IMG/VR virus record: IMGVR_UViG_3300027816_000052
Coordinates: 1 to 64,000 of that record
Strand: one strand, 5' to 3'
Length of the DNA: 64,000 nt
A model generated the notes under the pieces. It worked only from the letters and a program-made list of their open reading frames with translations, was not told the DNA's origin and searched no databases. Of this stretch, positions 3,542 through 52,546 are shown piece by piece; positions within the stretch are counted from its first letter, which is position 1, and every line of letters starts with the position of its first letter. A program made the position numbers and the translations under genes.

Positions 3542-3543
3542 TA

Positions 3544-3668: not shown

Positions 3669-3682
3669 AGCCTTAAATTTAC

Positions 3683-3758
3683 GCCACTGTAGCTCAATTG
3701 GCAGAGCACTAGTTTTGTAAACTAGCGGTTAGCGGTTCGACTCCGCTCAGTGGCTCCA
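3683..3758 (+). tRNA. tRNA-Thr(UGU), CCA encoded
   Basis: GCCACTG/CAGTGGC; CTAGT-TTTGTAA-ACTAG; ends TCCA. Confidence 0.95.
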
Positions 3759-3777
3759 AGAGTTCTTTGAAAAAGTT

Positions 3778-3907
3778 TGAGAAAAAGCGGAAGTACGAAA
3801 GTACGGGAAGATTGTGATAAAAAGAACAAGGAAATAGTCCCTCCCATTGCAGTCACAAGCATAATTGGGTAGAGTGGAAAGGTGAGTCCACGAACCGCTT
3901 TTTCTCA
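3778..3907 (+). ncRNA. Candidate structured RNA A
   Basis: Perfect 13-bp closing helix TGAGAAAAAGCGG/CCGCTTTTTCTCA; GTAC-GAAA-GTAC and GTGGA/TCCAC hairpins. Confidence 0.65.
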
Positions 3908-3918
3908 TTTTACATGAA

Positions 3919-4097
3919 AATATAAAATTAGTGAGCAAAGAGAAAGTGACTTCACCAGTCAGCGTAGTATACAACGGAAGCACGGGCAAGAAAGTAGCAT
4001 GGTAGCTACCTGAAATAAAAATCGATTGCTGGGACAAAACTGAAAACGTTTAATTGGATACCCTTAAAATGAAGATATACCTCACTAACTTTATATT
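3919..4097 (+). ncRNA. Candidate structured RNA B
   Basis: 16/17-bp closing helix; internal TGACT/AGTCA and GTAGC/GCTAC hairpins. Confidence 0.65.
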
Positions 4098-4102
4098 AAA
4101 AA

Positions 4103-4246
4103 TTTGTGGTCAGTACGGATTGACGTACCTAGTAAGCTGGTAAATTACATTACGAAGAAACGCTGAAGCGACTAAGAAATGTACTAATATGTAATTATTA
4201 GTGGGTTGTTGTTAAGTCTTAGTATGTTAGTTTTTAACACCACAAA
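4103..4246 (+). ncRNA. Candidate structured RNA C, pseudoknotted
   Basis: TTTGTGGT/ACCACAAA closing stem, AATTACAT/ATGTAATT, loop-loop ACTAAGA/TCTTAGT. Confidence 0.6.
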
Positions 4247-4250
4247 AAAA

Positions 4251-4324
4251 GCGAGTGTAGCTTAGTTGATTAAAGCGCCGTCCTTCCAAGTCGGAGATCG
4301 TCAGTTTGAGTCTGACCACTCGCT
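4251..4324 (+). tRNA. tRNA-Gly(UCC)
   Basis: GCGAGTG/CACTCGC; loop CTTCCAA; U73; T-loop TTTGAGT slightly atypical. Confidence 0.88.
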
Positions 4325-4410
4325 CACTAATCCCCTCTAACCTCTGAAGAAATTCAAGTTATTGGGTAAAACAGTTTCTTTTCATATTTATAGAATAAAC
4401 ATCTATCAAT

Positions 4411-19369: not shown

Positions 19370-19398
19370 GAAAAGGGGGAAACTTATTTCCCCTTTTC
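19370..19398. terminator. Bidirectional intrinsic terminator
   Basis: GAAAAGGGG(G)A...TCCCCTTTTC between convergent genes. Confidence 0.75.
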
Positions 19399-23565: not shown

Positions 23566-25728
23566 TTAAGAACCCATTAAGTTTTGTTTCAATTGTCCTG
23601 TTACGTCAGAGAACTTAGAACTAACTTTTGATAATTGGGGACAAACAAAACTCAATAATTTATCTTCAACTACCTTAACTAATTCAGATTTATCTCTAAA
23701 TAAGAGGTCAGAAATTGAGTTTCTAATGAGATCTTCAATGTAGTTTGTTTCACCAGTTTTACTCATTTTCTTTCTAAAAACTGTGTTTACAATTGTTTCA
23801 GCAATCCATTTAACTAATGTATTACAATCACCAGATAGTATTTTACCAATATTATCTAAATCGAAGCTAGCAAATCCGGTAATTAATAGATTTGATAAAT
23901 AACTATCTTTTGGTACATTTAATTTCTCTAATATCCAAGCCATTAATCTTTCTTGTAAAGTATCCGCAAAACCACCAAAACCTAATTTACCTAAGAAATT
24001 AAACCAGTTTTCTTGAATTAAATTTTCATTAAATCCTTGTTCCTTTAAGAAATTAGCTTCACTAATTAAAGATTCAAATAATTGATTGTAATCTGATTGA
24101 GTTTTTAAACCATTAGATGCTTCAACCAAAACGTATAATCTGTTTTTGATTATTTTGTTTTCTTTAATAAGTCTTTGTTTCTTCGTTTTTTCAACTATTA
24201 AGTTTTCTTTAATCATATTTTTTAAATTTTTCGTTGATTCCATTTTTAATTTTCTACCTTCTTTTCCGAGTTTTTTACATGATTCGGTTACATCGGCAAA
24301 AGGTATTCTATATTCACCAGCACTTGCTGATCTTAGGTCAACAATTATTCTATCAGCACTTTTTTCTTGTGGTGTTCTAAACATTCTCTTGAAACGTGTC
24401 TCATCTTTATTAATCAACTTACATTGATTATTGCAAGCCATAAGAAACTTTTTAGTTCGTTCTGTTGAACTTTGGTCGATTGGTTTTTTACCTAAGAAAT
24501 TTTTATACCATTGAAATAATGCTGTTAAACATTTTTCATCATTAATGTCTTCTATTTTTGTACTTATAGTAGAAGTGTCTATACCAGATTTAACGCTGGG
24601 CCAAATATACACAAGAATGCTTTCAGAAGTATTCCCTTGGGGGAATGATTGTATTAATTCTTTTAATGGAATTTGTTTGAAGCTACTTCTTTGTGATGTG
24701 GGATCATTTAATTGGTCTATTGAATTATCCTTACCTATTTCATCAATTGGATAGTTAATGAAATTATCAGATTTGACCATAGATGTTATTGTATTTGGGT
24801 CAAGATCGGTATACTTATCTGGATAAGTTTGTTTTAAAAGTTTAAGACCTTCTTTAAAGGTATAAAAAGCGTTTGATTGATAACCATTTTTAAGGGCGCT
24901 TAAAATTCCTTTATAAATAGAATTTATTCTATTTTCATCGGGCGGATTATCAAGAATTCCGAGATTCCTAAGAAATTGATTGTTAGTCTGTGTACCAGCT
25001 TGTTGTTGTGTGGTTGTTGTTTGTGTACCTGCTTGTTGTGTACCTGTTGGTGTGGCGGCTTGTTGTTGTGTGGTTACCGCTTGTTTTTTTCTTGATGTAA
25101 TAATTTGTTCCACCATTTCTTTTTTTTCTGGTTGAGTGTTTGTTTCATCAGGTATAAAATCTGCAAGTTCATATGTTCCGCGATCAGTTTCCGCATTATT
25201 AACATATTTTCTCCAAGTATTATTTTTAAAGAAATAATAAAATCCTTGCCCAATCGGTTCGGAATCACCATCAATTAAATTCGCAGCTTTTTTATAAGCA
25301 AGTTGACCAGTTTTAGCTTTTATTAATGAACCACCACTAAATGTACCATTTTTTATATTTTCTTCAAACCATTTTTGTTCTTCGGATTTTTCTTCCGTTT
25401 TTGTTTTTTCGGGTTCGGGGGTACTAAGTTTAGTTCCAGATTTTTTATATTCTTCACCATAAGAATTCCAAGCTGCGGTTGTTTTTGGACCAAATCTTCC
25501 ATAACCACCGGCTTTGTTTAAAACACCGTTTGGATAACCTGTTGCCCAACCCGGATGAGTTTTATCCAACCAATCTTGGAATTTTTTAACACCATCAACA
25601 TTACCTAAAAATTCAGGAATTGATGACGGTCTTGGTGTTTGAGTTGTTCCAGTTCCGGTTCCACTTGCGCGAGGTGGTTTGCCACTAGGTGTTGGCGGTT
25701 TACCTTCTTTAATTATTATAGGTTTCAT
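23566..25728 (-). CDS. Large putative virion protein (PG-binding-like N-terminus, TQQ repeats)
   Basis: VKKFQDWLD...GRFGPKTTAAW; TTTQQQAGTQ repeats; many LxE motifs. Confidence 0.65.
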   Translation of the reverse strand: MKPIIIKEGKPPTPSGKPPRASGTGTGTTQTPRPSSIPEFLGNVDGVKKFQDWLDKTHPGWATGYPNGVLNKAGGYGRFGPKTTAAWNSYGEEYKKSGTKLSTPEPEKTKTEEKSEEQKWFEENIKNGTFSGGSLIKAKTGQLAYKKAANLIDGDSEPIGQGFYYFFKNNTWRKYVNNAETDRGTYELADFIPDETNTQPEKKEMVEQIITSRKKQAVTTQQQAATPTGTQQAGTQTTTTQQQAGTQTNNQFLRNLGILDNPPDENRINSIYKGILSALKNGYQSNAFYTFKEGLKLLKQTYPDKYTDLDPNTITSMVKSDNFINYPIDEIGKDNSIDQLNDPTSQRSSFKQIPLKELIQSFPQGNTSESILVYIWPSVKSGIDTSTISTKIEDINDEKCLTALFQWYKNFLGKKPIDQSSTERTKKFLMACNNQCKLINKDETRFKRMFRTPQEKSADRIIVDLRSASAGEYRIPFADVTESCKKLGKEGRKLKMESTKNLKNMIKENLIVEKTKKQRLIKENKIIKNRLYVLVEASNGLKTQSDYNQLFESLISEANFLKEQGFNENLIQENWFNFLGKLGFGGFADTLQERLMAWILEKLNVPKDSYLSNLLITGFASFDLDNIGKILSGDCNTLVKWIAETIVNTVFRKKMSKTGETNYIEDLIRNSISDLLFRDKSELVKVVEDKLLSFVCPQLSKVSSKFSDVTGQLKQNLMGS

Positions 25729-31016: not shown

Positions 31017-31031
31017 GTTTATTATTTCTTG

Positions 31032-31106
31032 TAGTTCCTTTCGGACTCGAACCGAAAACCTTTTCCACGTCAAGGAAACGCTCTGAACCAATTGAGCTAA
31101 GGAACT
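31032..31106 (-). tRNA. tRNA-Val(GAC)
   Basis: AGTTCCT/AGGAACT; TTTCC-TTGACGT-GGAAA; TTCGG-TTCGAGT-CCGAA. Confidence 0.9.
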
Positions 31107-31878: not shown

Positions 31879-33072
31879 TCATTTTTGTTTCAAATCTAAG
31901 TTAAGATCTTTAGCCGATTTCATCATCATAATTTCCATGAAATTTGCCGCCGCATTGCTAGAACCACTTGAGTTACCACTCATATATTGAGGAACAACAT
32001 TTCCTTGATATTTCGAGAAGGCGTTTGCCCAATATTCTTGTGATTTAAGCCAAGCATCCAACTTTTGCTCAAGAGCGCCATTAGCAGACATTACAAGACG
32101 TTTCTTTTCAGCTTCACCTTGACCTTCAAGAATTTGTTTTTCTTTATTAAGTCTAGCAGTTTCAACATCAAGTTCAGCAACTCGTTTACGCGATTCAGCC
32201 TCAGTCACTTGTTTTGCTTTAATAACCTCTTGATCCCACTTAGCTTTAGCTGCTTCAGCTTCACCTTGTTTTGCGATGGTAATAGCATCTTGTTCGGCTT
32301 TTTTAGAATTTGCAATTGCCAATTGTACACTCATTAATGCTTGTTGTTGATTTTGAATTTGCTTTTCAACGGTCGCATCATATGTAATACCATTAATTGA
32401 AATATTATAGAGTCTAATTCCATATCCAGCAATTGGTGATTCTTCTTGTCGAATTGGTTGACCGGGAGTCTTTTCAACAATCTCAACTTTGGTTACTAAT
32501 TTTTCCTCACCAGTCAATGGATCAGCTTCTTTAACCTCAACTTGTTTAGTTTTATATACACCTCTAGAAGCTTGATCTTCAATATAGAAAATCAAATCAT
32601 TTCTTTTTTCCGCATACGACTCTTTAGATGTCATAAGCGGTCCAGTCATGTAAACTGATTTTTCAATGTTAGTTTTAATTAACTGATTCTCCAACGCTTC
32701 TTGCGAACCAAATGTTGAGTGTAATTTAATAATTTGTTCAGAAGATAAGGGAAGATCATAACGAACCGATCCTGAAATTGTTGCATGTCCACCATCATTC
32801 CATTTTACGGCAATTGATTTATCTGTTTCACCCTCCTCTTTTGGAGAAGAAAACCAAAATTGATTTGATTTACGATAATGTGTTGCCCTACCAAATAATT
32901 GCCAAACCCAACCCGGTTCAGTATATGTATGAAGATTACCATCAAATGGGTCTTGAATAACAACAACTTCTCCAGCATCAACATCTTCCCAAATAAGGGG
33001 AACAAAGATTAGACCAAGAACAATAAATACGCCAATAACAATTGCACTAATAGATTTTTTAAAGTTTTCCAT
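31879..33072 (-). CDS. SPFH/Band 7/prohibitin family membrane protein
   Basis: N-terminal TM, V.AGEVVV...G...EPGW, SPFH core, AE-rich coiled coil. Confidence 0.85.
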   Translation of the reverse strand: MENFKKSISAIVIGVFIVLGLIFVPLIWEDVDAGEVVVIQDPFDGNLHTYTEPGWVWQLFGRATHYRKSNQFWFSSPKEEGETDKSIAVKWNDGGHATISGSVRYDLPLSSEQIIKLHSTFGSQEALENQLIKTNIEKSVYMTGPLMTSKESYAEKRNDLIFYIEDQASRGVYKTKQVEVKEADPLTGEEKLVTKVEIVEKTPGQPIRQEESPIAGYGIRLYNISINGITYDATVEKQIQNQQQALMSVQLAIANSKKAEQDAITIAKQGEAEAAKAKWDQEVIKAKQVTEAESRKRVAELDVETARLNKEKQILEGQGEAEKKRLVMSANGALEQKLDAWLKSQEYWANAFSKYQGNVVPQYMSGNSSGSSNAAANFMEIMMMKSAKDLNLDLKQK

Positions 33073-34630: not shown

Positions 34631-34918
34631 TTTTATAATTAATCTGTCATAATGCGTGAAATAACCCCGTTTATTAGCCTCATCTAATATTTCATCAGTT
34701 GTTGGTCTTGGTTGTTTTTCCAAATAATATTTGATATTTTTTTCATCCATATATTCTCTAATGGTTTCTTCAACATTACTAAATAAGCGATAAATATTAT
34801 CAGCTAAAATATCAGCATCAACCAATCCGGTTACATTTTCCATCATATCATCAAAAACAAAATTTGATGATTCATCCTTTTTAATAATCAAGATATAATA
34901 GTCGTATTTCATCTGCAA
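34613..34918 (-). CDS. Hypothetical protein
   Basis: 101-aa ORF. Confidence 0.6.
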   Translation of the reverse strand: MQMKYDYYILIIKKDESSNFVFDDMMENVTGLVDADILADNIYRLFSNVEETIREYMDEKNIKYYLEKQPRPTTDEILDEANKRGYFTHYDRLIIKSNQRN

Positions 34919-35364
34919 TGATAATCCGCCGCTTTAGTTGCGATTTGAATATTTGGTTTTACATTAACTTGATACCCCAATGAATTCGCCCACCCCTTTG
35001 TTGCACTGATTAATTGATTACTTTTATAAAATTCATCCTCATTATAATCCATATCTAATTCAAGTTTTAGACTGACATTAACTTTGTTTTTAAACCATTC
35101 CGCAATTTCAATCGTGCTTTCAGCTTCCTTCCAAAGTCTAGTCCATAAATCATTAATTCTATTGATTCTTTCTTTTGTGAAAATATAATGGACACCCCTA
35201 GTACCATAACGATAGGCGATAACGGAAACATAAACGGTTTCATTTGACACGTTTTGTGAATCAGTACCGATATGGATTTTTACATCAGGATTTTCCCTGA
35301 TAACCTCAAGAGTATGTTTTACAACATCTACTGGAGTTCCATCTAATTTTCTAAACACTTTCAT
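34909..35364 (-). CDS. RNase H-like YkuK (DUF458) family protein
   Basis: IHIGTDSQ...YVSVIA...L..EAESTIEIA...D.N...A..AD pattern. Confidence 0.8.
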   Translation of the reverse strand: MKVFRKLDGTPVDVVKHTLEVIRENPDVKIHIGTDSQNVSNETVYVSVIAYRYGTRGVHYIFTKERINRINDLWTRLWKEAESTIEIAEWFKNKVNVSLKLELDMDYNEDEFYKSNQLISATKGWANSLGYQVNVKPNIQIATKAADYHCR

Positions 35365-35878: not shown

Positions 35879-35954
35879 TGGTGGACCGGAAGGGATTCGA
35901 ACCCTCATCCTCCTGAGTGCAAATCAGGTGCTCATCCAGTTGAGCTACCAGCCC
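35879..35954 (-). tRNA. tRNA-Ala(UGC), CCA encoded
   Basis: GGGCTGG/CCGGTCC with G3:U70; CCTGA-TTTGCAC-TCAGG. Confidence 0.95.
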
Positions 35955-36063
35955 ATGTTCCCGTTTTTCTTCATCATTTAGTTCACCACCCAGATGAACA
36001 AGTGGTGGATTTTGCTTTTGGAAGTCTGCATTACAGACCGTCACCACGGGAAAACCAACGCAG

Positions 36064-36138
36064 TAGTTCCTGTGTGACTTGAACACACGCCCTTTCGAAT
36101 GTAAATCGAACGCTCTAAACCAACTGAGCTAAGGAACT
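36064..36138 (-). tRNA. tRNA-Val(UAC)
   Basis: AGTTCCT/AGGAACT; TTCGA-TTTACAT-TCGAA. Confidence 0.9.
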
Positions 36139-36146
36139 ATATTTCG

Positions 36147-36218
36147 CACCCCCTGAAGAATTCGAATCCTCACCAACGATGTTGGAGATCGTTACTCTAC
36201 CAATTGAGCTAAAGGGGT
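36147..36218 (-). tRNA. tRNA-Trp(CCA)
   Basis: ACCCCTT/AGGGGGT; ACGAT-CTCCAAC-ATCGT; G73. Confidence 0.9.
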
Positions 36219-36228
36219 ATGTATTTTG

Positions 36229-36304
36229 GGTGAATAACGAGACTCGAACTCGCAAAAATCCGGGACCACAATCCGGAGTGTATACCAATTCCACCATATT
36301 CACC
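36229..36304 (-). tRNA. tRNA-His(GUG) with encoded G-1
   Basis: G-GTGAATA/TATTCAC-C; loop TTGTGGT. Confidence 0.9.
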
Positions 36305-36312
36305 ATAATTCG

Positions 36313-36391
36313 TACTCCCGGTGAGAATCGAACTCACACCCTTTCGGATCTGTTCCTAAAACAGACGCGGCTACCGTTACGCCACAGGAGT
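36313..36391 (-). tRNA. tRNA-Leu(UAG)
   Basis: ACTCCTG/CGGGAGT; TCTGT-TTTAGGA-ACAGA; variable arm. Confidence 0.9.
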
Positions 36392-36402
36392 GTTTAACAT
36401 CA

Positions 36403-36433
36403 CAAAGATATAACTTTATTTTCTTATCTCCAA
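36403..36433 (-). promoter_or_regulatory. Bacteroidota-type promoter for the Leu-His-Trp-Val-Ala tRNA run
   Basis: TTG-N20-TATCTTTG. Confidence 0.8.
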
Positions 36434-36442
36434 ATTAAACTG

Positions 36443-36514
36443 AGGTCGAAGTGAGAATCGAACTCACGTAAGAAGTTTTGCAGACTTCCGCCTAAACCAC
36501 TCGACCATTCGACC
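36443..36514 (-). tRNA. tRNA-Cys(GCA)
   Basis: GGTCGAA/TTCGACC; GAAGT-CTGCAAA-ACTTC; U73. Confidence 0.92.
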
Positions 36515-36700
36515 TTACTTTTCACCTAATTTTCTAATAATACCTCCCTTAGCTTCATACCAAGTACCCTGATAATTAAATTCAAATCCGGTATCTCTCA
36601 TACAAATACCCATAAATTCACCGTCTCTTGTTTTTAAACCAACCCCTGAAAAAACATCTTCAAGAATTATTTCACCGTTTTCATCTGTTGTTAATTTCAT
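36515..36700 (-). CDS. Small hypothetical protein (start re-called at MKLTTD)
   Basis: The longer call overlaps tRNA-Arg. Confidence 0.6.
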   Translation of the reverse strand: MKLTTDENGEIILEDVFSGVGLKTRDGEFMGICMRDTGFEFNYQGTWYEAKGGIIRKLGEK

Positions 36701-36717
36701 AATTTTAATTTTTTTTG

Positions 36718-36789
36718 TATCCCCCGAAGGATTCGAACCCTCACCAACTGAGTCGAAATCAGGTATGCTATCCATTACACTAGAGGGAC
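36718..36789 (-). tRNA. tRNA-Arg(UCG)
   Basis: GTCCCTC/GGGGGAT; CCTGA-TTTCGAC-TCAG; GAGGG-TTCGAAT-CCTTC. Confidence 0.85.
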
Positions 36790-37049: not shown

Positions 37050-37492
37050 CTTTTTAATAATTTATCACATTTATTTTTCCAATTTGATGAGAGACATGAA
37101 ATTGGTGTTACTTTTGTAAGTTGATTAATTAATCTAATTTCTTGTGGATTATCATCCAAATGAAATACAAAATCATTTCCATTCTTTTTAAACCACCAAG
37201 CCTTTGGGTCGTGGTTTGTAAAAATCACTCGTTCCCTTGGGATTCCTAAATCTTTCGCCACCAAAAACAAATCTTCTTCATTTGACCACCAAAGAACATC
37301 ATCGTCTCTTTTAAAAGTTTCATCATCAGGATATTTCTTTCTGAAAAATTCTTTTGGATTTTCCGGTCTTGAGGTAACAATCCATACCTCAATGTTGGAA
37401 TCTTCAATTAATTCCTTACAATAATTTTGTATGAACAGCGAATGACCAAGACAATCATCAAAATCAAAACTTACTTTTTTCATGCTAACCAA
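37046..37492 (-). CDS. HAD-superfamily phosphatase/nucleotidase-like protein
   Basis: VSFDFDDCL, VWIVTSR and HLDDN motifs. Confidence 0.75.
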   Translation of the reverse strand: MVSMKKVSFDFDDCLGHSLFIQNYCKELIEDSNIEVWIVTSRPENPKEFFRKKYPDDETFKRDDDVLWWSNEEDLFLVAKDLGIPRERVIFTNHDPKAWWFKKNGNDFVFHLDDNPQEIRLINQLTKVTPISCLSSNWKNKCDKLLKR

Positions 37493-37782
37493 CGAATTAA
37501 ATATTTTGCTTGCATTTGAGATGTAAAATCAGCCTCACCCATATCTGTAACAGGAATTTCAAAACTTATCACTTCAGTATCCTCACCACCATCTCCCAAA
37601 AATAATGAATAATAAGCAACACCGAGTCTGATTTTATCAAAAAACGCTATTGGATTGTTTTTATATAGCATTTTTTTAATTTCGTTTTTTCTTATTGTAT
37701 TTAATTTTTTATCCATTTTATCTAAAGTTATTTTATCAACGCTATCCATTGCTTCTTTATATAATTCTTCGTCTGTCTTCAT
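37480..37782 (-). CDS. Hypothetical protein
   Basis: 100-aa ORF. Confidence 0.6.
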   Translation of the reverse strand: MKTDEELYKEAMDSVDKITLDKMDKKLNTIRKNEIKKMLYKNNPIAFFDKIRLGVAYYSLFLGDGGEDTEVISFEIPVTDMGEADFTSQMQAKYLIRWLA

Positions 37783-39296
37783 CGTATTAAATTAATATTA
37801 CCAATTTTATTAATTAAGTTATTAGCTATAATTCCGCTAAATTTATAAACATAAACACCATTCTGACAATTAAGCCCATCCCATGATTCGTTTTGATTGG
37901 TAAATTCATAAATTTTCTCACCCCAACTATTATAAATTTGCATTTTAAAATTTTCAATTTTTGAAATTGTTGTTACTTTAAATGAATCATTTATATTATC
38001 ATAATCGGGTGAAAATGTGTTAGGAATATAAATATCTCCACAAATTTCTGAATAAATTTCTAATGTTGTTAAATCGCCAAAACAACCAAATTCATTTATC
38101 TCATAAACACTTAATATGTTTTCAAAATTAGAAATGTTTGGTAAATTTATTGTTATAGTATTTTGTGTCAAATTTAATGTATCTTGATTTAAAATCCAAA
38201 TATATGAAGAATTTATATTACCAGTTGTTAAAAATTGTAAAGTTCTATCGAATTCTGAGCAATTTACAAAACTATTTTCACCGATAATAATAACATCTTC
38301 AGGATTTGGATTCACAACAACTAATATCGAATCGTTGTTTCTACAACCAAAAGAATCAATAAATGTATATTCAACCCAATTTGTTCCAAATTGTGGTAAA
38401 TAATTAGGACCAATATTCCAAGTACCACCAATAGGGAATGCTTGCATTTGAACCGGTGAATCATTAAAACATAGTGTGTCAACAGGATTAATTAATACTA
38501 CAGGTAATTGATTTACGTTTACAGTAAAAATAGTTGTATCTATACAATTATTAATTGTTTCTTCAATAATACTAATTTGTTGAGTCCCTATATTATTCCA
38601 AATATTTATTTGGGGATTACCTGTATAAAAAATTGAGTTATTTGTTGGATTTGCTAATTCATGAATTGTCGTATCCCCAAGACATACGGTTTGGACCAAT
38701 GGGGTTATTGGATTACTTTCAAAGTCTAAAGGAATATTGGTACCATTAAATAAATTAAATGGTGATAGATTACAGTTATTATTTCCCCAAGATCCCCAAG
38801 TACCGTCAGCACCAGCGGTTATTTGAATTATAATGTCCTCAGAGGAACATGTCTCAACAACTGTGGTTGTAAAACAAAAATTCCATGTACAATTTCCAAA
38901 ATCACCCCAATCATTACCGGGATTTCCATCAATAACACCACCTTGATTTGTTTCAAAAAACCAACCCGGTCCAGCAGAAATACCCGTTGATGATGATGTT
39001 ACCGTACCAGAAATCCAAACCCAATTACCAGAACCACCATTACAATTGGTAGGTGATGCTTGCGGAATAGGGGGTGTTAAAGAAGGACTTAGATTAATTT
39101 CAAATCCCTCAACCCAATTTGAACTAACGTTCAAACCGTTCCAACCATTCATTGTATAACACACATTTAAAACAGTTCCACTAGCGTATTGACCATTAAT
39201 TGGGGTTGGGTTTATTGAAAAACTTTCAATCCCATTACATTGATTAAACGCTAAATTACTAATTAAAGTAAAAATTATTAATAATACTTTTTTCAT
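37779..39296 (-). CDS. Secreted protein with gliding-motility-associated (T9SS type B) C-terminal domain
   Basis: Signal peptide; Ig/PKD-like repeats; C-terminal IYIPNTFSPDYDNINDSF...IYNSWGEKIY...WDG...GVYVY...GNINLIR. Confidence 0.85.
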   Translation of the reverse strand: MKKVLLIIFTLISNLAFNQCNGIESFSINPTPINGQYASGTVLNVCYTMNGWNGLNVSSNWVEGFEINLSPSLTPPIPQASPTNCNGGSGNWVWISGTVTSSSTGISAGPGWFFETNQGGVIDGNPGNDWGDFGNCTWNFCFTTTVVETCSSEDIIIQITAGADGTWGSWGNNNCNLSPFNLFNGTNIPLDFESNPITPLVQTVCLGDTTIHELANPTNNSIFYTGNPQINIWNNIGTQQISIIEETINNCIDTTIFTVNVNQLPVVLINPVDTLCFNDSPVQMQAFPIGGTWNIGPNYLPQFGTNWVEYTFIDSFGCRNNDSILVVVNPNPEDVIIIGENSFVNCSEFDRTLQFLTTGNINSSYIWILNQDTLNLTQNTITINLPNISNFENILSVYEINEFGCFGDLTTLEIYSEICGDIYIPNTFSPDYDNINDSFKVTTISKIENFKMQIYNSWGEKIYEFTNQNESWDGLNCQNGVYVYKFSGIIANNLINKIGNINLIR

Positions 39297-39462
39297 TTTT
39301 TATAAAAAATTAAGAGTTTAAACCACCACTTCCACCACATGAATTTTAATGTTAAAAGACCTTCTGGGTCATGGTAGTATATGATTGTTGGAATTAAAGG
39401 TTTATGGTCCTCGATAATAAATCGCTTTGACCTATCTGTTCTAATTTTCATGTTTGTTAATT

Positions 39463-39989: not shown

Positions 39990-40005
39990 TATTATTAATT
40001 TTTAG

Positions 40006-40079
40006 TTGTCCCACTCTGACTCGAACAGAGAACCTCCACATTATCAGTGTGACGATCTAACCAATTGATCTATGAGACA
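40006..40079 (-). tRNA. tRNA-Ile(GAU)
   Basis: TGTCTCA/TGGGACA; TCACA-CTGATAA-TGTGG. Confidence 0.92.
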
Positions 40080-40321
40080 ATAAGTGGTTATTTTATCGCT
40101 TTTATCCCTTGATCAGAGGGGAAGTGCTCGTAAAATAACCAAAACCAAACTTCAAATATCATTATATGTTCTATATAAAATTCGACAAAAGATAAACCCT
40201 AAAAAGCAACAAATCAAATTTATAATGGTAACATCATAAGATTGGGGATATAATATTTGTGTATATACACCAGCTAGGAATAAGGTAATGTAAGATAATA
40301 CTTTAAGTACGTGTTTCATTT

Positions 40322-40570
40322 TTATATAAAATAAGGTCCGTAGATAACACCCCCTGACTCAACAACACCCTTTTCCATTTCCCAAGCTTTTTTTAATGCT
40401 TCTTTAAGGGTATATACAGGACTAGCACCATTACCCCTAATTAACATGTGTGCGTGTTTGAAAACTCTTTTCTTTGAGATTTCTTTGGGAAAAATGATTA
40501 AGCTATTATCGCTATTTTTTTGATTTAAATAACGAGTTAACATTCCTTTTTTTGGTTCCATATCATTCAT
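40322..40570 (-). CDS. Hypothetical protein
   Basis: 82 aa; VFKHAH...EALKKAWEMEK motif. Confidence 0.6.
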   Translation of the reverse strand: MNDMEPKKGMLTRYLNQKNSDNSLIIFPKEISKKRVFKHAHMLIRGNGASPVYTLKEALKKAWEMEKGVVESGGVIYGPYFI

Positions 40571-40717
40571 TGTTTTTTTCTTTATCTTTAATTTCTTCTA
40601 TACGTCTGATGGTTGAGGGTTTAGTACATCTTCCACCGTAACCACAAAGATACGAAAGATTTCTGGTTTTTCTACGCACAATTTTACCTTGTTTACTCAT
40701 TTTGATTTTTTTATATG

Positions 40718-40789
40718 CGGTCTATGACGGGTTCGATCCGTCTACTCTACCGTGACAGGGTAGGATGATAGCCATTTCACCAATAGACC
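40718..40789 (-). tRNA. tRNA-Asp(GUC)
   Basis: GGTCTAT/ATAGACC; CTACC-CTGTCAC-GGTAG; T-loop ATCGAAC. Confidence 0.88.
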
Positions 40790-40800
40790 AAAAGAAATTG

Positions 40801-40872
40801 AGGACTCGGAGAATTACGATATCTCGACCTAAAAGTTAACAGCTTTTTGCTCTGCCCCTGAGCTACGAGTCC
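40801..40872 (-). tRNA. tRNA-Asn(GUU)
   Basis: GGACTCG/CGAGTCC; AAAAG-CTGTTAA-CTTTT; atypical T-arm. Confidence 0.82.
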
Positions 40873-40878
40873 TTATTG

Positions 40879-40951
40879 TGGTACTTCGTGGTTCCGAGCC
40901 ACGCTCCTCCCGTCTTCAGCGGGATGCTTTCACCAGATTAGCTTAAGTACC
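40879..40951 (-). tRNA. tRNA-Phe(GAA)
   Basis: GGTACTT/AAGTACC; TCCCG-CTGAAGA-CGGGA; T-loop CTCGGAA. Confidence 0.85.
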
Positions 40952-41006
40952 GTTATCAGTTACAAAACCTCTCAAATTAGGAACTTCACCGATGTAGTTT
41001 TTTTAG

Positions 41007-41090
41007 TGGAAGTAGTAAGACTCGAACTTACGAACCCCTTTCGGAGAAGTGATTTACAGTCACTTGGAATTGCCGCTATCCGATACTTCC
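41007..41090 (-). tRNA. tRNA-Tyr(GUA)
   Basis: GGAAGTA/TACTTCC; AGTGA-CTGTAAA-TCACT; long variable arm. Confidence 0.92.
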
Positions 41091-41094
41091 ATTT

Positions 41095-41158
41095 GCTGTC
41101 TCTCCATGCTGTCAATGCGGATGTTTTATCATGAATTTAGGTACCTCGCATTGCTCCC
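41095..41158 (-). ncRNA. Small RNA with TGACAG-N3-GGAGAGAC motif (copy 1)
   Basis: CAATGCG/CGCATTG stem followed by a motif shared with 42034..42103. Confidence 0.55.
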
Positions 41159-41164
41159 ATATTG

Positions 41165-41236
41165 TAGTCCCGACGAGAATCGAACTCGCATTACCGGAGT
41201 GAAAATCCGGGTTCCGAACCATTAGAAGACGGGACC
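41165..41236 (-). tRNA. tRNA-Glu(UUC)
   Basis: GGTCCCG/CGGGACT; CCGGA-TTTTCAC-TCCGG. Confidence 0.9.
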
Positions 41237-41260
41237 ATTTAAAATTTTAATGAACTAAAG

Positions 41261-41334
41261 CTGTCCCGGAAGGGGTCGAACCTTCAAACTTCCCCTTCAA
41301 AGGGGGATGACTTTGCCAATTTGTCTACAGGACA
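41261..41334 (-). tRNA. tRNA-Gln(UUG)
   Basis: TGTCCTG/CGGGACA; TCCCC-CTTTGAA-GGGGA; G73. Confidence 0.9.
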
Positions 41335-41339
41335 ATAAG

Positions 41340-41473
41340 CGGGGGAGGTTGGATTCGCACCAACAATCGTTACATTTCAGAGTAATTGCTTTACTGTTTC
41401 GAAGTATCTCATATTCTCACCACTCGGACGAGGGAAAATGAAATGAGTTTTTCTTTTTATTAGCTTCTCCCCC
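41340..41473 (-). ncRNA. tRNA-like RNA with large D-loop insertion and 8-nt anticodon loop
   Basis: GGGGGAG/CTCCCCC, GCT/AGC D-stem, TTAC/GTAA, GTTGG-TGCGAAT-CCAAC. Confidence 0.7.
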
Positions 41474-41485
41474 AAGAAATTATAG

Positions 41486-41568
41486 TGGATGTTGACGGAA
41501 TCGAACCGCGTTTCCAAACAGCACCCCCAACCTCATCATGAACGGTCGGTCAAGGTTTAGCAACACCC
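41486..41568 (-). ncRNA. tmRNA-TLD-like / Ala-acceptor tRNA-like RNA (83 nt)
   Basis: GGGTGTTG/CAACATCC with G3:U70, A73, T-loop TTCGATT, no D-stem. Confidence 0.7.
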
Positions 41569-41579
41569 AAAAAAGTTAG

Positions 41580-41653
41580 TTCTCCCAGCGAGACTCGAAC
41601 TCACAACTCCCATATTAAAAGTATGGTACTCTAACCAATTGAGTTACAGGAGA
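41580..41653 (-). tRNA. tRNA-Lys(UUU)
   Basis: TCTCCTG/TGGGAGA; CCATA-CTTTTAA-TATGG. Confidence 0.9.
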
Positions 41654-41658
41654 TTATG

Positions 41659-41792
41659 TGATGAGTGATGGATTCGAACCACCATAAGCTGCTTCGTTTA
41701 GGATATCCTCTAAGCAACAGCGGGATATGTATAGTGTTGGGTAACTATATCACTAATATCCACCGCAACCCGTTCCCTTGGGCTATCTCATC
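41659..41792 (-). ncRNA. tRNA-like RNA with extended anticodon and variable arms
   Basis: GATGAG/CTCATC, GCCC/GGGT D-stem, GGTGG-TTCGAAT-CCATC T-arm, no canonical anticodon loop. Confidence 0.7.
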
Positions 41793-41797
41793 AAATT

Positions 41798-41942
41798 GAG
41801 AGGACACCGATACCTCCTCTCTGGGTGGGTCTAATTTCGAATTCTTTTATGACTTGTTCTGAAAGTCGCCAACATACTCATCATTTCTGATTTAGTCATT
41901 GCACGTCCCACTTAACTTTAAACGCGGTCGGTTTTAAGGTAT
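41798..41942 (-). ncRNA. Candidate structured RNA downstream of tRNA-Pro
   Basis: GTGGG/CCCAC, GACTT/AAGTC, GAGAGGA/TCCTCTC, ATACCT/AGGTAT. Confidence 0.45.
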
Positions 41943-41950
41943 GTATTGTG

Positions 41951-42026
41951 TCGAGGTGAGAGGATTTGAACCTCCATGATATCTTCGCCCCAAACGAAGA
42001 GACTTAGCCAATTAGTCCACACCTCG
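41951..42026 (-). tRNA. tRNA-Pro(UGG)
   Basis: CGAGGTG/CACCTCG; CTTCG-TTTGGGG-CGAAG. Confidence 0.9.
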
Positions 42027-42168: not shown

Positions 42169-42199
42169 CAAAGTTATGTCTTATTCTTCAAACTACCAA
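42169..42199 (-). promoter_or_regulatory. Bacteroidota-type promoter for the main tRNA/ncRNA operon
   Basis: TTG-N20-TAACTTTG. Confidence 0.75.
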
Positions 42200-42220
42200 A
42201 ACTTTTTTGGTATAAAATTT

Positions 42221-42819: not shown

Positions 42820-42878
42820 ATTTTATTTGAACATAATGAGGTTCTGTGTTAAAGTAAACTATTCATATATTTATGGTT

Positions 42879-43697
42879 ATGAAAAAGATTAAATTAACAG
42901 AATCGGATTTATATAGAATTGTTAGAAAGGTTCTTCTTGAGCAAGATGAAAAAAAGAAAAGTTTTACATTTTCTCCGGGTTCATTTGAATCTCTTATAAC
43001 ATCATCATCAGGTGAAAGATTTGTTAAACATCTTAATAACAAATATGATAGGGTTATTGTTAATGAAGAGTTGGATTTAAGTGAAACACCAATTCAATCC
43101 TTGCCGGATAATCTTCATGTTGAGGGAAATTTGGATTTAGAAGGAACGCAAATTCAATCCTTACCGGATAATCTTCATGTTGGGGGGAATTTGTTTTTAT
43201 ATGGATGCAAAAATCTTAAATCCTTACCGGATAATCTTTATGTTGGGGGAAATTTGGAGTTAGATGGAATACCAATTCAATACTTAGGGAATAATATTCA
43301 TGTTAAGGGAAATTTGGAGTTAGATGGAATACCAATTCAATCCTTACCGGATAATCTTCATGTTGGGGGAGATTTGAGTTTAGTAGGAACACCAATTCAA
43401 TCCTTACCGGATAATCTTCATGTTGGGGGATATTTGGATTTATATGGAACACCAATTCAATCCTTACCGGATAATCTTCATGTTGGGGGAAGTTTGTATT
43501 TAAGAGGAACACCAATTCAATCCTTACCGGATAATCTTCATGTTGAGGGAGATTTGTTTTTAGGTAAAACACCAATTCAATCCTTACCGAATAATCTTGA
43601 CGTTAAGGGGACAATTTATATTAAAGGAACACCATTAAATGATAATGATGAATTGGTTAAGAAATATGAAGAAAAATATAGAATTATTAGAGTTTAA
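42879..43697 (+). CDS. LRR-like repeat protein with MKKIKLTESDL leader
   Basis: About nine tandem 20/21-aa repeats; start re-called because ATATTTAT overlaps the ATG at 42873. Confidence 0.88.
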   Translation: MKKIKLTESDLYRIVRKVLLEQDEKKKSFTFSPGSFESLITSSSGERFVKHLNNKYDRVIVNEELDLSETPIQSLPDNLHVEGNLDLEGTQIQSLPDNLHVGGNLFLYGCKNLKSLPDNLYVGGNLELDGIPIQYLGNNIHVKGNLELDGIPIQSLPDNLHVGGDLSLVGTPIQSLPDNLHVGGYLDLYGTPIQSLPDNLHVGGSLYLRGTPIQSLPDNLHVEGDLFLGKTPIQSLPNNLDVKGTIYIKGTPLNDNDELVKKYEEKYRIIRV

Positions 43698-50776: not shown

Positions 50777-52546
50777 ATGCAAGGATTAACAAAAGAGCAA
50801 TTAGCGTTAGAGTATGTTAGGTGTTTAAAAAGCACACCATATGCACTTAAAACGTATTTACAAACATATGATAACACGGTACAAAAATATGTCCCTCTTG
50901 AGCTATTCAAAGACCAGCAACAACTAATCAACGATTATGATACGTTTGAAGAAAACATTGCGTTAAAATATCGTCAAGCTGGCGTATCAACAGCTACAGC
51001 GGGTTGGGCTTCAAAAATACTTGCTTTTGCGAAAAAAGAAAAACCTGAAAAAATTCTAATTATTGCAAACAAATTGGATACCGCCGTTGAGATGGCGAAT
51101 AAGATTAGAAGTTTTATTGACCAGTGGCCTAAATGGGTTGGTATTGAGTTTTCAGATGAAAAGAACGCTGCTAGACATTTTAAATTAAATAATGATAGTG
51201 AGGTTAAAGCTGTTGCCACTTCTAAAGATGCTCTTAGAGGTTATACACCAACAATTCTTATTTTTGATGAGGCAGCTTATATTGAAGCTGATGATGATTT
51301 CTGGGCTGCTTGTATGGCATCTCTTTCCACCGGTGGTAAAGTCATTGTAATATCAACACCAAACGGATTTGATCCAATTTATTATGAAATTTATGACCAA
51401 TCAATTCGTAATATGAATAACTTCAAAATTACAGAAATGTATTGGTATAGAGATCCCAGATATACAAAAGATTTATATCTAGTTAAAACAAATGATATCG
51501 TGGATTATCTTTTAAATAGAGAAGAAAGAAAAGATTTAGAAATTATTGATTTTTCACATATAAGTCCACATGAAAGAGATTTTAATATAATCAAGGATTA
51601 TATTGGTCAAGGGTTCAAACCATGCTCAACATGGTTTGAAAATATGGTTAAAAAATTAAAATATGATAGAAGAAAAGTTGCACAAGAACTAGATTGTCAG
51701 TTTTTAGGTTCAGGTGACAACGTTGTAGATTCAACAATTCTTGAAGATATTAGAGAAAATCAAGTTTGTGAGCCAAAATATAAAACAATGGGAGGTTCTT
51801 TATGGGTTTGGAAAGAACCCGAACTTGGTCATAAGTACGTTTGTGGCTTGGATGTCTCAAGAGGAGACAGTGATGATTTTTCAGCTTTTCAGATAATTGA
51901 TTTTGAAACCAGAGAACAAGTTGCGGAATATCTTGGTAAAGTACCACCAGATGTGATGGCGGAAATAGCGTATAAGTGGGGAACAACATATAACGCTTAT
52001 ATTGTTATTGATATTACCGGTGGTATGGGGGTTTCTACTGCTAGAAAATTACAAGAATTAAATTATAAAAATTTATATATCGATGGGCTTGAGCTTGGTA
52101 ATAAATGGAAATATGATGCAAAAGCACTTGATAAAATTCCCGGTATTAATTTCAATAATAAAAGAGTTCAGATTATTTCTTCATTTGAGGAGGCTTTAAG
52201 ACATAAATTTAAAGTTTATAGTAGTAGATTATTAAATGAGTTAAATTCATTTGTTTATATTAATGGTAGACCTGATCACCAAAAGGGTCGTCATGATGAT
52301 TTAATCATGTCAATTGCTATGGCAATTTATGTTTCCGAATTTTCTTTCACACAATTAGAAAAAGTTACGGAACATACGAAAGTTATGATTGAATCATGGC
52401 AAGTTAATACATATGAACCAAAACAAACTTCACAATTCTTTAATCCAAGCGTATCTTTTACTGATGATAAAAGTATATATAGAAATAACCCAACAAGAAA
52501 AGACTATGAACAACATTCTTGGTTATTTGGTGGGATAAGAAGGTAA
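50777..52546 (+). CDS. gp17: Terminase large subunit (T4 gp17-like)
   Basis: LKYRQAGVST Walker A, LIFDEAA Walker B, ISTPNG, GLDVSRG and HDDLIMS nuclease motifs. Confidence 0.93.
   Translation: MQGLTKEQLALEYVRCLKSTPYALKTYLQTYDNTVQKYVPLELFKDQQQLINDYDTFEENIALKYRQAGVSTATAGWASKILAFAKKEKPEKILIIANKLDTAVEMANKIRSFIDQWPKWVGIEFSDEKNAARHFKLNNDSEVKAVATSKDALRGYTPTILIFDEAAYIEADDDFWAACMASLSTGGKVIVISTPNGFDPIYYEIYDQSIRNMNNFKITEMYWYRDPRYTKDLYLVKTNDIVDYLLNREERKDLEIIDFSHISPHERDFNIIKDYIGQGFKPCSTWFENMVKKLKYDRRKVAQELDCQFLGSGDNVVDSTILEDIRENQVCEPKYKTMGGSLWVWKEPELGHKYVCGLDVSRGDSDDFSAFQIIDFETREQVAEYLGKVPPDVMAEIAYKWGTTYNAYIVIDITGGMGVSTARKLQELNYKNLYIDGLELGNKWKYDAKALDKIPGINFNNKRVQIISSFEEALRHKFKVYSSRLLNELNSFVYINGRPDHQKGRHDDLIMSIAMAIYVSEFSFTQLEKVTEHTKVMIESWQVNTYEPKQTSQFFNPSVSFTDDKSIYRNNPTRKDYEQHSWLFGGIRR

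What the first reader, a model, noticed from the sequence alone, without database searches (positions are those of the whole stretch)
37779..39296. Phage gene carrying a complete T9SS type B sorting domain
Seen: Sec signal peptide plus a C-terminal domain with the gliding-motility-associated CTD pattern (IPNxFSPxxDxxNDxF...IYNxWGxxIY...WDG...GVYVY...GxIxLIR). Known: such CTDs route proteins through the Bacteroidota type IX secretion system to the cell surface with PorP/SprF-like partners. Inference: the phage uses the host T9SS to display its own surface protein (receptor masking, superinfection exclusion, altered adhesion or gliding). It sits inside the tRNA region.
Basis: partly seen in the sequence, partly recalled or inferred. 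Interest (0 to 1): 0.65.

Follow-up and report, generated by a model that had tools for sequence, protein, structure and literature searches.

The report
Phage-borne T9SS type-B adhesin-like cargo
A 256-kb freshwater jumbo phage carries a real, conserved gene for a small adhesin-like protein with the export signals (Sec signal peptide plus type-B T9SS C-terminal domain) that Bacteroidota use to put proteins on their surface. It belongs to a large, mostly viral family that has not been described, so phages probably remodel the surface of infected cells this way.

Summary
Window 37779-39296 (-) is a 505-aa ORF. It has a Bacteroidota-style signal peptide, a 170-aa Cys/Trp-rich beta-sandwich of the adhesin/pilin type, three Ig-like domains, and a complete type-B T9SS CTD (PF13585 53 bits, cut-off 27; TIGR04131 38 bits, cut-off 35).

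It is phage DNA, not a chimera:
- Its composition matches the genome.
- Independent assemblies bridge both junctions.
- A sister phage has it at the same position.
- dN/dS is 0.26.

At least 127 IMG/VR contigs encode relatives. Their N-domains sit in one mostly viral clade, next to chromosomal SprB/PKD/CHU_C adhesins of Flavobacteriales/Bacteroidia MAGs. Of the 79 viral loci kept, 49 split the same architecture into 3-4 separately exported subunits, and 14 are fused like the window gene.

No phage record encodes a PorP/SprF shuttle, so the cargo must use a host one, like the "orphan" type-B substrates of F. johnsoniae.

Export and display are well supported by inference but untested. The purpose is open: receptor or gliding-adhesin competition, superinfection exclusion, or adhesion.

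Phage T9SS cargo with type-A CTDs was reported in 2020. I found no report of a type-B adhesin-like family in phages. I rate it a new variant of a known kind, interest about 0.6.

The parts
39243..39296 (-). Signal peptide (residues 1-18: MKK, 12-residue hydrophobic core, AFN), with predicted SPI cleavage before Gln19
   Evidence: Read from the sequence. Q19-C20 is invariant in 16/16 homologues. Each subunit of the split relatives has the same SP+Q pattern. Q-rule: PMC5837995. No dedicated signal-peptide predictor was available.
38727..39242 (-). N-terminal passenger module (residues 19-190): Cys/Trp/Gly-rich beta-sandwich of the adhesin/pilin type, with no Pfam family
   Evidence: AF2 domain model has pLDDT 92.5 and pTM 0.87. 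VIA-align Z is 8-9 to Gram-positive pilin/adhesin Ig-like domains. phmmer finds 275 clusters in 1.8 billion representatives. The domain sits at the tip of SprB/PKD/CHU_C proteins. dN/dS is 0.16.
38298..38726 (-). Two Ig-like domains (residues 191-333)
   Evidence: AF2 model with pLDDT about 90. Foldseek top hits are Ig-like strings of the T9SS-related GhpA grappling hook. This part corresponds to subunit B of the split relatives.
38037..38297 (-). Third Ig-like domain (residues 334-420), directly before the CTD; the fastest-evolving part
   Evidence: AF2 model. dN/dS is 0.47 against 0.16-0.25 elsewhere in the gene. Together with the CTD it corresponds to subunit C of the split relatives.
37782..38036 (-). 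T9SS type-B C-terminal sorting domain (residues 421-505); stop codon at 37779-37781
   Evidence: PF13585 53.3 bits (cut-off 27) and TIGR04131 38.2 bits (cut-off 35). All five conserved blocks align with bacterial type-B CTDs.
35879..36789 (-). Downstream tRNA block (Ala, Val, Trp, His, Leu, Cys, Arg) on the same strand
   Evidence: ARAGORN
40005..42026 (-). Upstream tRNA block (Ile, Asp, Asn, Phe, Tyr, Glu, Gln, Lys, Pro) on the same strand. A Bacteroidota-type promoter-like site (TTTG..TAnnTTTG) lies at 42169-42200 (-), just upstream.
   Evidence: ARAGORN and pattern scan. The scan overall is barely above chance: 13 sites against 8.0 +/- 2.8 expected. The sister phage L016 lacks this block but keeps the gene.
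37480..37782 (-). Downstream 100-aa ORF overlapping the stop by 4 nt (same transcription unit); no family. A homologue lies directly upstream of the CHU_C gene in L008.
39293..39451 (-). Upstream 52-aa ORF overlapping the start codon by 4 nt (ATGA), which suggests translational coupling in a run of small minus-strand ORFs

Best explanation
The ORF is a genuine accessory (non-virion) gene of a freshwater jumbo phage that infects a Bacteroidota host, probably one related to Flavobacteriales. It encodes a shortened phage version of the host's 'gliding-motility-associated CTD' adhesins.

Proposed route:
1. The gene is transcribed with the tRNA/small-ORF block (inferred).
2. The Sec pathway exports the protein. 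Signal peptidase I cleaves before Gln19, following the Bacteroidota Q-rule. The Cys-rich N-domain folds in the periplasm.
3. The type-B CTD takes the protein through the host SprA/Sov translocon.
4. The phage has no PorP/SprF gene, so a host PorP/SprF-like shuttle collects the protein. The 'orphan' type-B substrates of F. johnsoniae, which share the shuttle Fjoh_1677, behave this way.
5. The protein stays on the surface of the infected cell, either on the gliding track or statically anchored. It projects the adhesin-type N-domain on a stalk of three Ig-like domains.

Most likely purpose (inferred, about one chance in three): it occupies the shuttle or track positions, or the ligands, of host type-B adhesins. 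Such adhesins are themselves phage receptors in Flavobacterium. This would exclude superinfecting phage and stop progeny being lost on infected cells and debris.

Shown here: the architecture, the phage origin, conservation, purifying selection, the absence of a phage shuttle, and kinship with host adhesins.

Inferred: export, display and purpose.
For: Domain tests pass curated cut-offs, and the CTD is complete with all five conserved blocks.

The signal peptide has an invariant Gln at +1 (PMC5837995). Invariant cysteines suit an extracytoplasmic fold.

Phage origin:
- The terminase and tail/lysis-like genes lie nearby.
- GC is 0.296 against 0.299 for the genome. Codon usage is at the 67th percentile and tetranucleotide distance at the 77th.
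- An 11.5-kb stretch is 100% identical on a second IMG/VR contig, and a roughly 82%-identical sister phage is syntenic.
- Contigs from independent DNA runs, and a 4,188-nt contig from an RNA library, bridge both junctions without differences.

Conservation:
- Full-length homologues at 32-67% identity all sit in phage-like contexts.
- 127 IMG/VR contigs encode relatives.
- The nearest ESM-Atlas clusters are 94-100% viral.

Selection: dN/dS is 0.26 overall, 0.16 for the N-domain and 0.22 for the CTD.

The passenger has an adhesin/pilin-type fold and no enzyme fold. The same N-domain caps 700-3,900-aa SprB/PKD/CHU_C proteins in Flavobacteriales/Bacteroidia MAGs.

No PorP/SprF gene is found in this phage or in five other records, one of them 100% complete. 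The control bacterial genome has 11 over the cut-off.

Literature:
- Type-B CTDs need SprF-like shuttles, orphans share one, and the CTD decides the destination (PMC12618676; PMC9143113).
- SprB and RemA are thought to be phage receptors, and T9SS/gliding mutations give phage resistance (PMC9804748).
Against: - No experiment or raw-read expression evidence exists. Presence in RNA libraries does not prove transcription.
- The host is unidentified.
- TIGR04131 passes only narrowly. Three features deviate from the consensus: PDYDNIND instead of PNGDGxND, SWG instead of RWG, and a shorter loop after WDG.
- Published minimal type-B secretion signals are 150-235 aa and pair specifically with a shuttle (PMC12618676). 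Capture by a host shuttle is therefore not guaranteed.
- Residue -1 of the predicted cleavage site is Asn, which is less canonical than Ala, Ser or Gly.
- Nothing distinguishes exclusion from adhesion or other purposes.
- The gene evolves faster than its neighbours (67% aa identity against 79-93%). This fits an arms race but also fits relaxed constraint.
Confidence: 0.6

Rival explanations
1. Same export route, different purpose. The displayed protein is a working adhesin. It makes infected cells stick to particles, algae or neighbouring host cells, so that the burst happens next to new hosts, or it changes gliding behaviour. It does not block receptors.
For: The N-domain has the fold of pilin/MSCRAMM-type adhesin domains. 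It sits at the distal tip of long bacterial adhesin-like proteins. It is the most conserved part of the gene (dN/dS 0.16), as expected for a ligand-binding module. Some type-B CTDs anchor static adhesins (PMC12618676).
Against: No ligand is known. A stalk of three Ig-like domains is very short beside host adhesins of 1,000-3,900 aa, so it may not protrude beyond the surface layer. There is no direct evidence.
Confidence: 0.22
2. Take-over by jamming. The protein is a pseudo-substrate. It ties up the host SprF-like shuttle or the SprA translocon and so shuts down host secretion and gliding during infection. Its passenger has no surface function of its own.
For: It is an orphan type-B CTD with no phage shuttle. 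Shuttle pairing is specific and limiting (PMC12618676). The CTD deviates from consensus.
Against: The passenger domains are under purifying selection and are conserved across more than 100 phages, including as separate exported subunits. A mere plug would not need that.
Confidence: 0.08
3. Virion protein. It is an Ig-like decoration or receptor-binding protein whose CTD-like sandwich binds T9SS outer-membrane parts, and the N-terminal hydrophobic stretch is not a cleaved signal.
For: Ig-like domains are common on virions. The structural module begins only about 6 kb away. T9SS components are candidate flavophage receptors (PMC9804748).
Against: The signal peptide with Gln +1 is conserved in all homologues, and in each of the three subunits of the split forms. 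Invariant cysteines point to a periplasmic fold. The gene is on the opposite strand among tRNAs and small accessory ORFs. In related phages it sits beside thymidylate synthase, RNA ligase and CCA-adding enzyme genes, not structural genes. It has no PHROG structural family.
Confidence: 0.05
4. Artefact. The segment is host DNA joined to a phage contig by mis-assembly or mis-binning.
For: Bacterial homologues exist. IMG/VR contigs are computational predictions.
Against: Composition is identical to the genome. The 4-nt overlaps with both flanking phage ORFs are intact. The same context appears in a second contig and in a diverged sister phage. Contigs from independent runs bridge both junctions. 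The exact protein was seen on 13 contigs.
Confidence: 0.01

Closest known systems
Bacterial 'gliding motility-associated C-terminal domain-containing proteins' of Flavobacteriales/Bacteroidia MAGs (e.g. the 1,237-aa protein at L094:5875-9588, named as such by NCBI)
   Same: The same N-terminal beta-sandwich comes directly after the signal peptide, and the same type-B CTD sits at the end. Their N-domains form the sister clade to the mostly viral one.
   Different: The bacterial proteins are 700-3,900 aa with SprB repeats and PKD domains. They sit in chromosomal tandem arrays beside housekeeping genes, and their genomes carry many PorP/SprF shuttles. The phage protein has only three Ig-like domains, no SprB-repeat hit and no shuttle.
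Orphan type-B T9SS substrates of Flavobacterium johnsoniae (Fjoh_1123, Fjoh_1720, Fjoh_4934) served by the orphan shuttle Fjoh_1677 (PMC12618676)
   Same: Type-B CTD cargo whose gene is not followed by a sprF-like gene and which depends on a shuttle encoded elsewhere. At least one of these CTDs (Fjoh_1123) loads cargo onto the gliding machinery.
   Different: Those are host genes. I could not compare the sequences directly because no F. johnsoniae sequences were at hand. Whether the phage CTD resembles the orphan class is untested.
'Cryophage' T9SS cargo genes (Bellas et al. 2020, PMC7468147) and T9SS-sorting-domain ORFs in crAss-BACON phage clusters (PMC6949934)
   Same: Phage-encoded proteins with T9SS sorting domains, proposed to hijack the host T9SS and possibly to act in superinfection exclusion.
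   Different: The Cryophage genes carry type-A CTDs (PorV route, A-LPS anchoring). Two of the three passengers are enzymes (an endoglucanase and a GH39) and the third has a PA14 domain. They are hypervariable islands in one phage. Here the CTD is type B (SprF/PorP route), the passenger is adhesin-like, and the family spans at least 127 viral contigs.
Exported phage superinfection-exclusion or receptor-blocking proteins such as T5 Llp (from my own knowledge, not tested here)
   Same: A phage-encoded, Sec-exported envelope protein made during infection that alters the receptor landscape.
   Different: Llp is a small lipoprotein that binds FhuA directly. There is no homology. This is a functional analogy only.
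GhpA grappling-hook protein of Aureispira (PDB 9flw and related entries)
   Same: Best Foldseek matches of the whole model: strings of Ig-like domains in a Bacteroidota surface filament linked to the T9SS (bioRxiv 10.1101/2024.01.29.577165).
   Different: Identity is 12-16%, and the match is generic to Ig-like strings. GhpA is over 5,000 aa. No functional inference is justified.

Membership tests
T9SS type-B CTD cargo (TIGR04131 / PF13585 CHU_C) | C-terminal domain scores above the curated HMM cut-offs | tested here: met
   PF13585 53.3 bits (cut-off 27) and TIGR04131 38.2 bits (cut-off 35). The genome search gives 57.7 and 41.2 bits. The type-A model is below its cut-off.
T9SS type-B CTD cargo (TIGR04131 / PF13585 CHU_C) | Domain lies at the extreme C-terminus and is complete, with all conserved blocks | tested here: met
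   Residues 421-505 of 505. Alignment with bacterial CTDs shows the blocks xPNxF(S/T)Px-D-ND, h-N-x-WG, WDG, GhYxY and GxhxLhR. I could not map them onto the published motifs A-E, because the paper's figure is not held.
T9SS type-B CTD cargo (TIGR04131 / PF13585 CHU_C) | N-terminal Sec signal peptide (in Bacteroidota usually with Gln at +1) | tested here: met
   n-, h- and c-regions are readable in the sequence. Q19 is invariant in 16/16 homologues. No SignalP-type predictor was available.
T9SS type-B CTD cargo (TIGR04131 / PF13585 CHU_C) | Cognate PorP/SprF-like shuttle gene directly downstream (common but not universal: 9 of 12 in F. johnsoniae) | tested here: not met
   No PF11751 match in the 256-kb genome or in five related phage records. 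The control genome has 11 over the cut-off. The gene is therefore an 'orphan' substrate.
T9SS type-B CTD cargo (TIGR04131 / PF13585 CHU_C) | Secretion depends on the T9SS and a shuttle, and the producing cell has a T9SS | not testable with these tools
   The host is unknown. A Bacteroidota host is inferred from the Q-rule, the CTD, the relatives and the closest cultured terminase relative, a Flavobacterium phage.
SprB-type gliding adhesins | SprB repeats (PF13573) and very large size | tested here: not met
   P0001 has no PF13573 hit at E<=1 and is 505 aa. Bacterial relatives with the same N-domain do have SprB repeats.
Phage-encoded T9SS cargo as described for Cryophage (type-A CTD) | Type-A CTD (TIGR04183 / PF18962) | tested here: not met
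   TIGR04183 19.4 bits against cut-off 23. PF18962 17.4 bits against cut-off 27.
Virion structural proteins | Match to a phage structural family, or location in the structural module | tested here: not met
   The only PHROG match has E=0.13 and unknown function. The gene is on the opposite strand from the terminase/structural block, among tRNAs.

The most novel reading that the evidence does not exclude
Large phages of freshwater Bacteroidota carry their own modular surface-fibre system, exported through the host T9SS. In most phages it is three separately Sec-exported subunits: a tip domain, a two-Ig stalk, and an Ig domain plus type-B CTD. The two CTD-less subunits end in a conserved Pro-Ile-x-His-Asn-COOH tail. 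That would imply periplasmic assembly and piggy-back secretion of CTD-less partners through the T9SS, a mode of T9SS export that, as far as I know, has not been described. The window gene would be the fused single-chain form. The fibre would reprogram the gliding/adhesin surface of infected cells, for exclusion or for targeted adhesion. The family would also have traded tip domains with host adhesins in both directions.
Probability: 0.15. Interest if true: 0.8.

Novelty: new variant of a known kind. Interest (0 to 1): 0.6.

Why it matters
T9SS-displayed adhesins drive gliding, attachment and virulence in Bacteroidota, and they are the suspected receptors of many flavophages. A widespread phage family built to enter the type-B (SprF/PorP) branch of that pathway would mean phages rewrite the host's motility/adhesin surface during infection. 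That bears on superinfection exclusion, phage-therapy cocktails for fish pathogens, and particle attachment of freshwater Bacteroidota.

The small phage proteins (505 aa fused, or about 190-aa subunits) would be convenient natural probes for two open questions about type-B secretion:
- How a CTD finds its shuttle.
- Whether CTD-less partners can be co-exported.

The passenger N-domain is also a common adhesin-tip module that has no Pfam family (275 clusters).

Tried and rejected
- Megablast of window 30-50 kb against GenBank phages found no match.
- tblastn of the protein against the same collection found only two partial matches, both in uncultured 630-640-kb phages, and no cultured phage.
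- PHROGs gave nothing meaningful.
- A profile search of the N-domain against PDB sequences gave nothing below E=0.07.
- The search for related loci with the N-domain alignment failed because it had no sufficiently conserved stretch. With the family alignment it found only two bacterial genomes, because the patterns were strict.
- Complex prediction on the three subunits of a split relative (L058) returned 'no answer'. The score of 0.65 was matched by a control in which subunit A was replaced by an unrelated protein (0.66). It is evidence neither for nor against assembly.
- Stop-codon read-through or another genetic code as an explanation for the split relatives is rejected. The subunit frames differ between loci, and each subunit has its own start codon and signal peptide.
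- A nucleotide-level explanation for the conserved HN-stop junction is rejected, because both codons vary synonymously.
- The chimera/host-DNA explanation is rejected.
- The Bacteroidota promoter pattern scan is barely above chance overall (13 against 8.0 +/- 2.8), so I use it only as a hint.
Full report

Window 37779..39296 (-) is an uninterrupted 505-aa ORF.

The C-terminal 85 residues match the type-B T9SS sorting domain above both curated thresholds:
- PF13585 CHU_C scores 53.3 bits against a cut-off of 27.
- TIGR04131 scores 38.2 bits against a cut-off of 35.
- The six-frame genome searches give 57.7 and 41.2 bits.
- The type-A models stay below their cut-offs.

The HMM alignments end at profile position 55-71. 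An alignment with bona fide bacterial CTDs shows all five conserved blocks, including the terminal G-x-h-x-L-h-R. Three things explain the narrow TIGR04131 pass: PDYDNIND instead of PNGDGxND, SWG instead of RWG, and a shorter loop after WDG.

The N-terminus has the n-, h- and c-regions of a Sec signal peptide. It is followed by Gln19-Cys20, which are invariant in all 16 family members aligned. Gln at +1 is the 'Q-rule' signature of signal peptidase I substrates in Bacteroidota (PMC5837995).

The gene lies between two same-strand tRNA blocks.

**2. Is it phage DNA?**

The window is the first 64 kb of a 256,029-bp IMG/VR virus record, with CheckV completeness 85%.
- A large terminase (50777-52546), a tape-measure/lysin-like protein and a tail-like protein are nearby.
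- The closest cultured terminase relatives are T4-like Flavobacterium phages, at 26.5% identity.
- GC content (0.296 against 0.299), codon usage (67th percentile) and tetranucleotide distance (77th percentile) match the rest of the genome.
- Both flanking ORFs overlap the gene by 4 nt.
- A second IMG/VR contig is 100% identical over 11.5 kb.
- A sister phage, about 82% identical in DNA, has the gene at the same position between the same neighbours, although it lacks the 40-42 kb tRNA block.
- The stretch is present in many freshwater metagenomes from different studies.
- Contigs from two independent DNA runs bridge both junctions. One 4,188-nt contig from an RNA library spans the whole region with no differences. 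That shows presence, not transcription.

The chimera hypothesis is rejected.

**3. Anatomy**

The AlphaFold2 model of the whole protein has pLDDT 83 and is all-beta. It contains an N-domain (19-190), three Ig-like domains (191-262, 265-333, 334-420) and the CTD. The whole model best matches Ig-like strings of the Aureispira grappling-hook protein GhpA and other adhesins.

The N-domain, folded alone with a 52-sequence alignment, reaches pLDDT 92.5 and pTM 0.87.
- Its best structural matches are Gram-positive pilin and MSCRAMM-type adhesin domains, at Z 8-9 and identity around 10% or less. This is an adhesin-type beta-sandwich with no enzyme fold. At these Z values it is only a fold class.
- It has no Pfam family.
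- It is common: phmmer finds 275 clusters at E<=1e-3 among 1.8 billion representatives.
- It usually sits directly after the signal peptide, or after a galactose-binding-like domain, in proteins of 200-3,400 aa that carry SprB repeats, PKD domains and CHU_C.

**4. Relatives**

Full-length homologues at 44-67% and 32-36% identity, and a 683-aa variant, all lie on contigs with phage hallmarks. These include many tiny ORFs, a CCA-adding enzyme, 2H phosphoesterase, thymidylate synthase, RNA ligase, GroEL, a GIY-YIG endonuclease and tRNA banks.

A scan of IMG/VR found 127 viral contigs encoding relatives. By shape, the nearest ESM-Atlas clusters are 94-100% viral and hold 62-177 members each. I inspected the context of only a subset of these contigs. 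IMG/VR labels are predictions.

True bacterial counterparts were found in a Flavobacteriales MAG and a Bacteroidia MAG. They are proteins of 1,158-1,237 aa with the same N-domain, SprB repeats, PKD domains and CHU_C. They sit in tandem arrays of type-B cargo genes, in one MAG beside malate dehydrogenase. Nine of the 24 genomes in that MAG's order carry the domain.

In an N-domain tree of 226 sequences, all viral copies fall in one clade (SH-aLRT 97). Its sister clade holds those MAG proteins. A few long proteins nested inside the 'viral' clade are chromosomal. Transfer between phage and host therefore happened more than once, and the direction is unresolved because the tree is unrooted.

**5. 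Selection**

Against the sister-phage orthologue, dN/dS is 0.26 overall:
- N-domain: 0.16
- Ig1-2: 0.25
- Ig3: 0.47
- CTD: 0.22

The neighbouring genes range from 0.03 to 0.28. Amino-acid identity is 67% for this gene against 79-93% for its neighbours. The gene is functional but fast-evolving. dS is near saturation in this AT-rich genome, so the ratios are rough.

**6. A variant architecture**

Of the 79 viral loci kept, 14 are fused like the window gene. Another 49 split the same architecture into three (rarely four) adjacent genes. The rest are cut short or unresolved. The three genes are:
- A: signal peptide plus N-domain.
- B: its own signal peptide plus two Ig-like domains.
- C: its own signal peptide plus an Ig-like domain and the CTD.

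Frames differ among loci, and each gene has its own start codon and signal peptide with Gln at +1. These are therefore separate genes, not read-through products.

In 85 of 92 cases the CTD-less subunits end in His-Asn, within a P-I-x-H-N tail. Both codons vary synonymously, so the motif is selected at the protein level. Its role is unexplained.

Fused and split forms interleave in the tree. A three-chain complex prediction gave no verdict.

**7. Mechanism**

Known biology:
- Type-B CTD proteins cross the SprA/Sov translocon.
- Cognate PorP/SprF-like shuttles collect them.
- The proteins stay bound to those shuttles on the surface, either on the gliding track or anchored through PorE (PMC9143113, PMC12618676).
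- Three orphan substrates in F. johnsoniae share an orphan shuttle, and the CTD dictates the destination (PMC12618676).

No PorP/SprF gene exists in this phage or in five other phage records, one of them 100% complete. The control bacterial genome has 11 over the cut-off.

I therefore conclude that the phage protein is an orphan type-B cargo that must borrow a host shuttle. This makes competition with host type-B adhesins an automatic consequence of its expression. T9SS-displayed adhesins (SprB, RemA) are thought to be flavophage receptors, and gliding/T9SS mutations give broad phage resistance (PMC9804748). Receptor displacement or masking is therefore my preferred purpose. A true adhesin role is nearly as likely. 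Shuttle jamming and a virion role are less likely, for the reasons given under the rivals.

**8. Novelty**

- Phage-encoded T9SS cargo is not new in principle. Bellas et al. (PMC7468147) described three type-A-CTD genes in a cryoconite phage as a 'unique occurrence'.
- T9SS sorting domains were noted in crAss-BACON clusters (PMC6949934).
- P. gingivalis phages encode Q-rule signal-peptide proteins (PMC10367356).
- My literature searches found no description of type-B CTD cargo in phages, of this viral family, or of its split form. Only open-access papers and preprints were searched.

I therefore class it as a new variant of a known kind.

Noticed in passing
L029:6001-7749; also L058:4158-5876 and about 47 other IMG/VR loci: Most viral relatives encode the window protein's architecture as three adjacent genes, each with its own signal peptide and Gln +1. 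Only the last carries the CTD. The two CTD-less subunits end in a conserved P-I-x-H-N-COOH tail (85 of 92), which is selected at the protein level. Its role (docking, piggy-back secretion or processing) is unexplained.
   Followed up: partly
L004:577-1647 (G000 about 233,096-234,166, outside the window): Possible second T9SS cargo in the same phage: a 356-aa ORF with an N-terminal signal-peptide-like segment ending FSQ|T and a C-terminal type-A-CTD-like tail. It scores below both cut-offs (TIGR04183 18.2 against 23; PF18962 16.7 against 27).
   Followed up: partly
window 2182-4325, 31031-31106, 35879-36789, 40005-42026: The window holds 22 tRNA genes in several blocks, including a tRNA-Ile with anticodon TAT (2182-2258). 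The sister phage L016 lacks the whole 39.3-42.4 kb block of tRNAs and small ORFs. The related contig L013 has a 24-tRNA bank 1.5 kb downstream of its CHU_C homologue.
   Followed up: partly
window 2138-2169 (+), 3510-3541 (+), 36403-36434 (-), 42169-42200 (-): Bacteroidota-type promoter-like sites (TTTG..TAnnTTTG) lie just upstream of tRNA clusters. Three of them share a longer motif, TTTGG(A/T)AGTTTGAA. The pattern as a whole is barely above chance in the window.
   Followed up: no
window 42873-43697 (+), repeats at 43071-43598: A 274-aa ORF contains 8.8 tandem copies of a 60-nt (20-aa) unit that looks leucine-rich-repeat-like (L-D-L-D-G-T-P-I-Q-S-L-P-D-N-L). It has a weak sub-threshold hit to an adhesive-domain family.
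   Followed up: partly
window 19384-21570 (-), 31879-33072 (-), 34909-35364 (-): Accessory genes: a Lon-like ATP-dependent protease (phrog_4871, E=4e-211), an SPFH/Band_7 protein and an RNaseH-like PF04308 protein.
   Followed up: no
L014:65-447: A tmRNA gene lies directly upstream of the CHU_C homologue on a related phage-like contig.
   Followed up: no
L094:5559-5846 and L095:5313-5600: In the bacterial tandem arrays, the type-B cargo gene that precedes the N-domain-bearing gene extends two residues past the CTD (…LYRHN in L094, …LYRHK in L095). This echoes the HN tail of the split phage subunits.
   Followed up: no
window 4411-8766 (+), 23566-25728 (-): Large ORFs of 1,451 aa and 720 aa have no PHROG match at E<=1e-5.
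   Followed up: no
BFVD entry A0A7S9SUG9 (Virus NIOZ-UU157); GenBank LR745206.1 and LR756502.1: The only clear BFVD structural match of the N-domain is an 800-aa 'GEVED domain-containing protein' of an uncultured virus (TM 0.74, 28% identity). Two uncultured phages of 630-640 kb hold partial matches, one to the Ig/CTD part and one to the N-domain.
   Followed up: no
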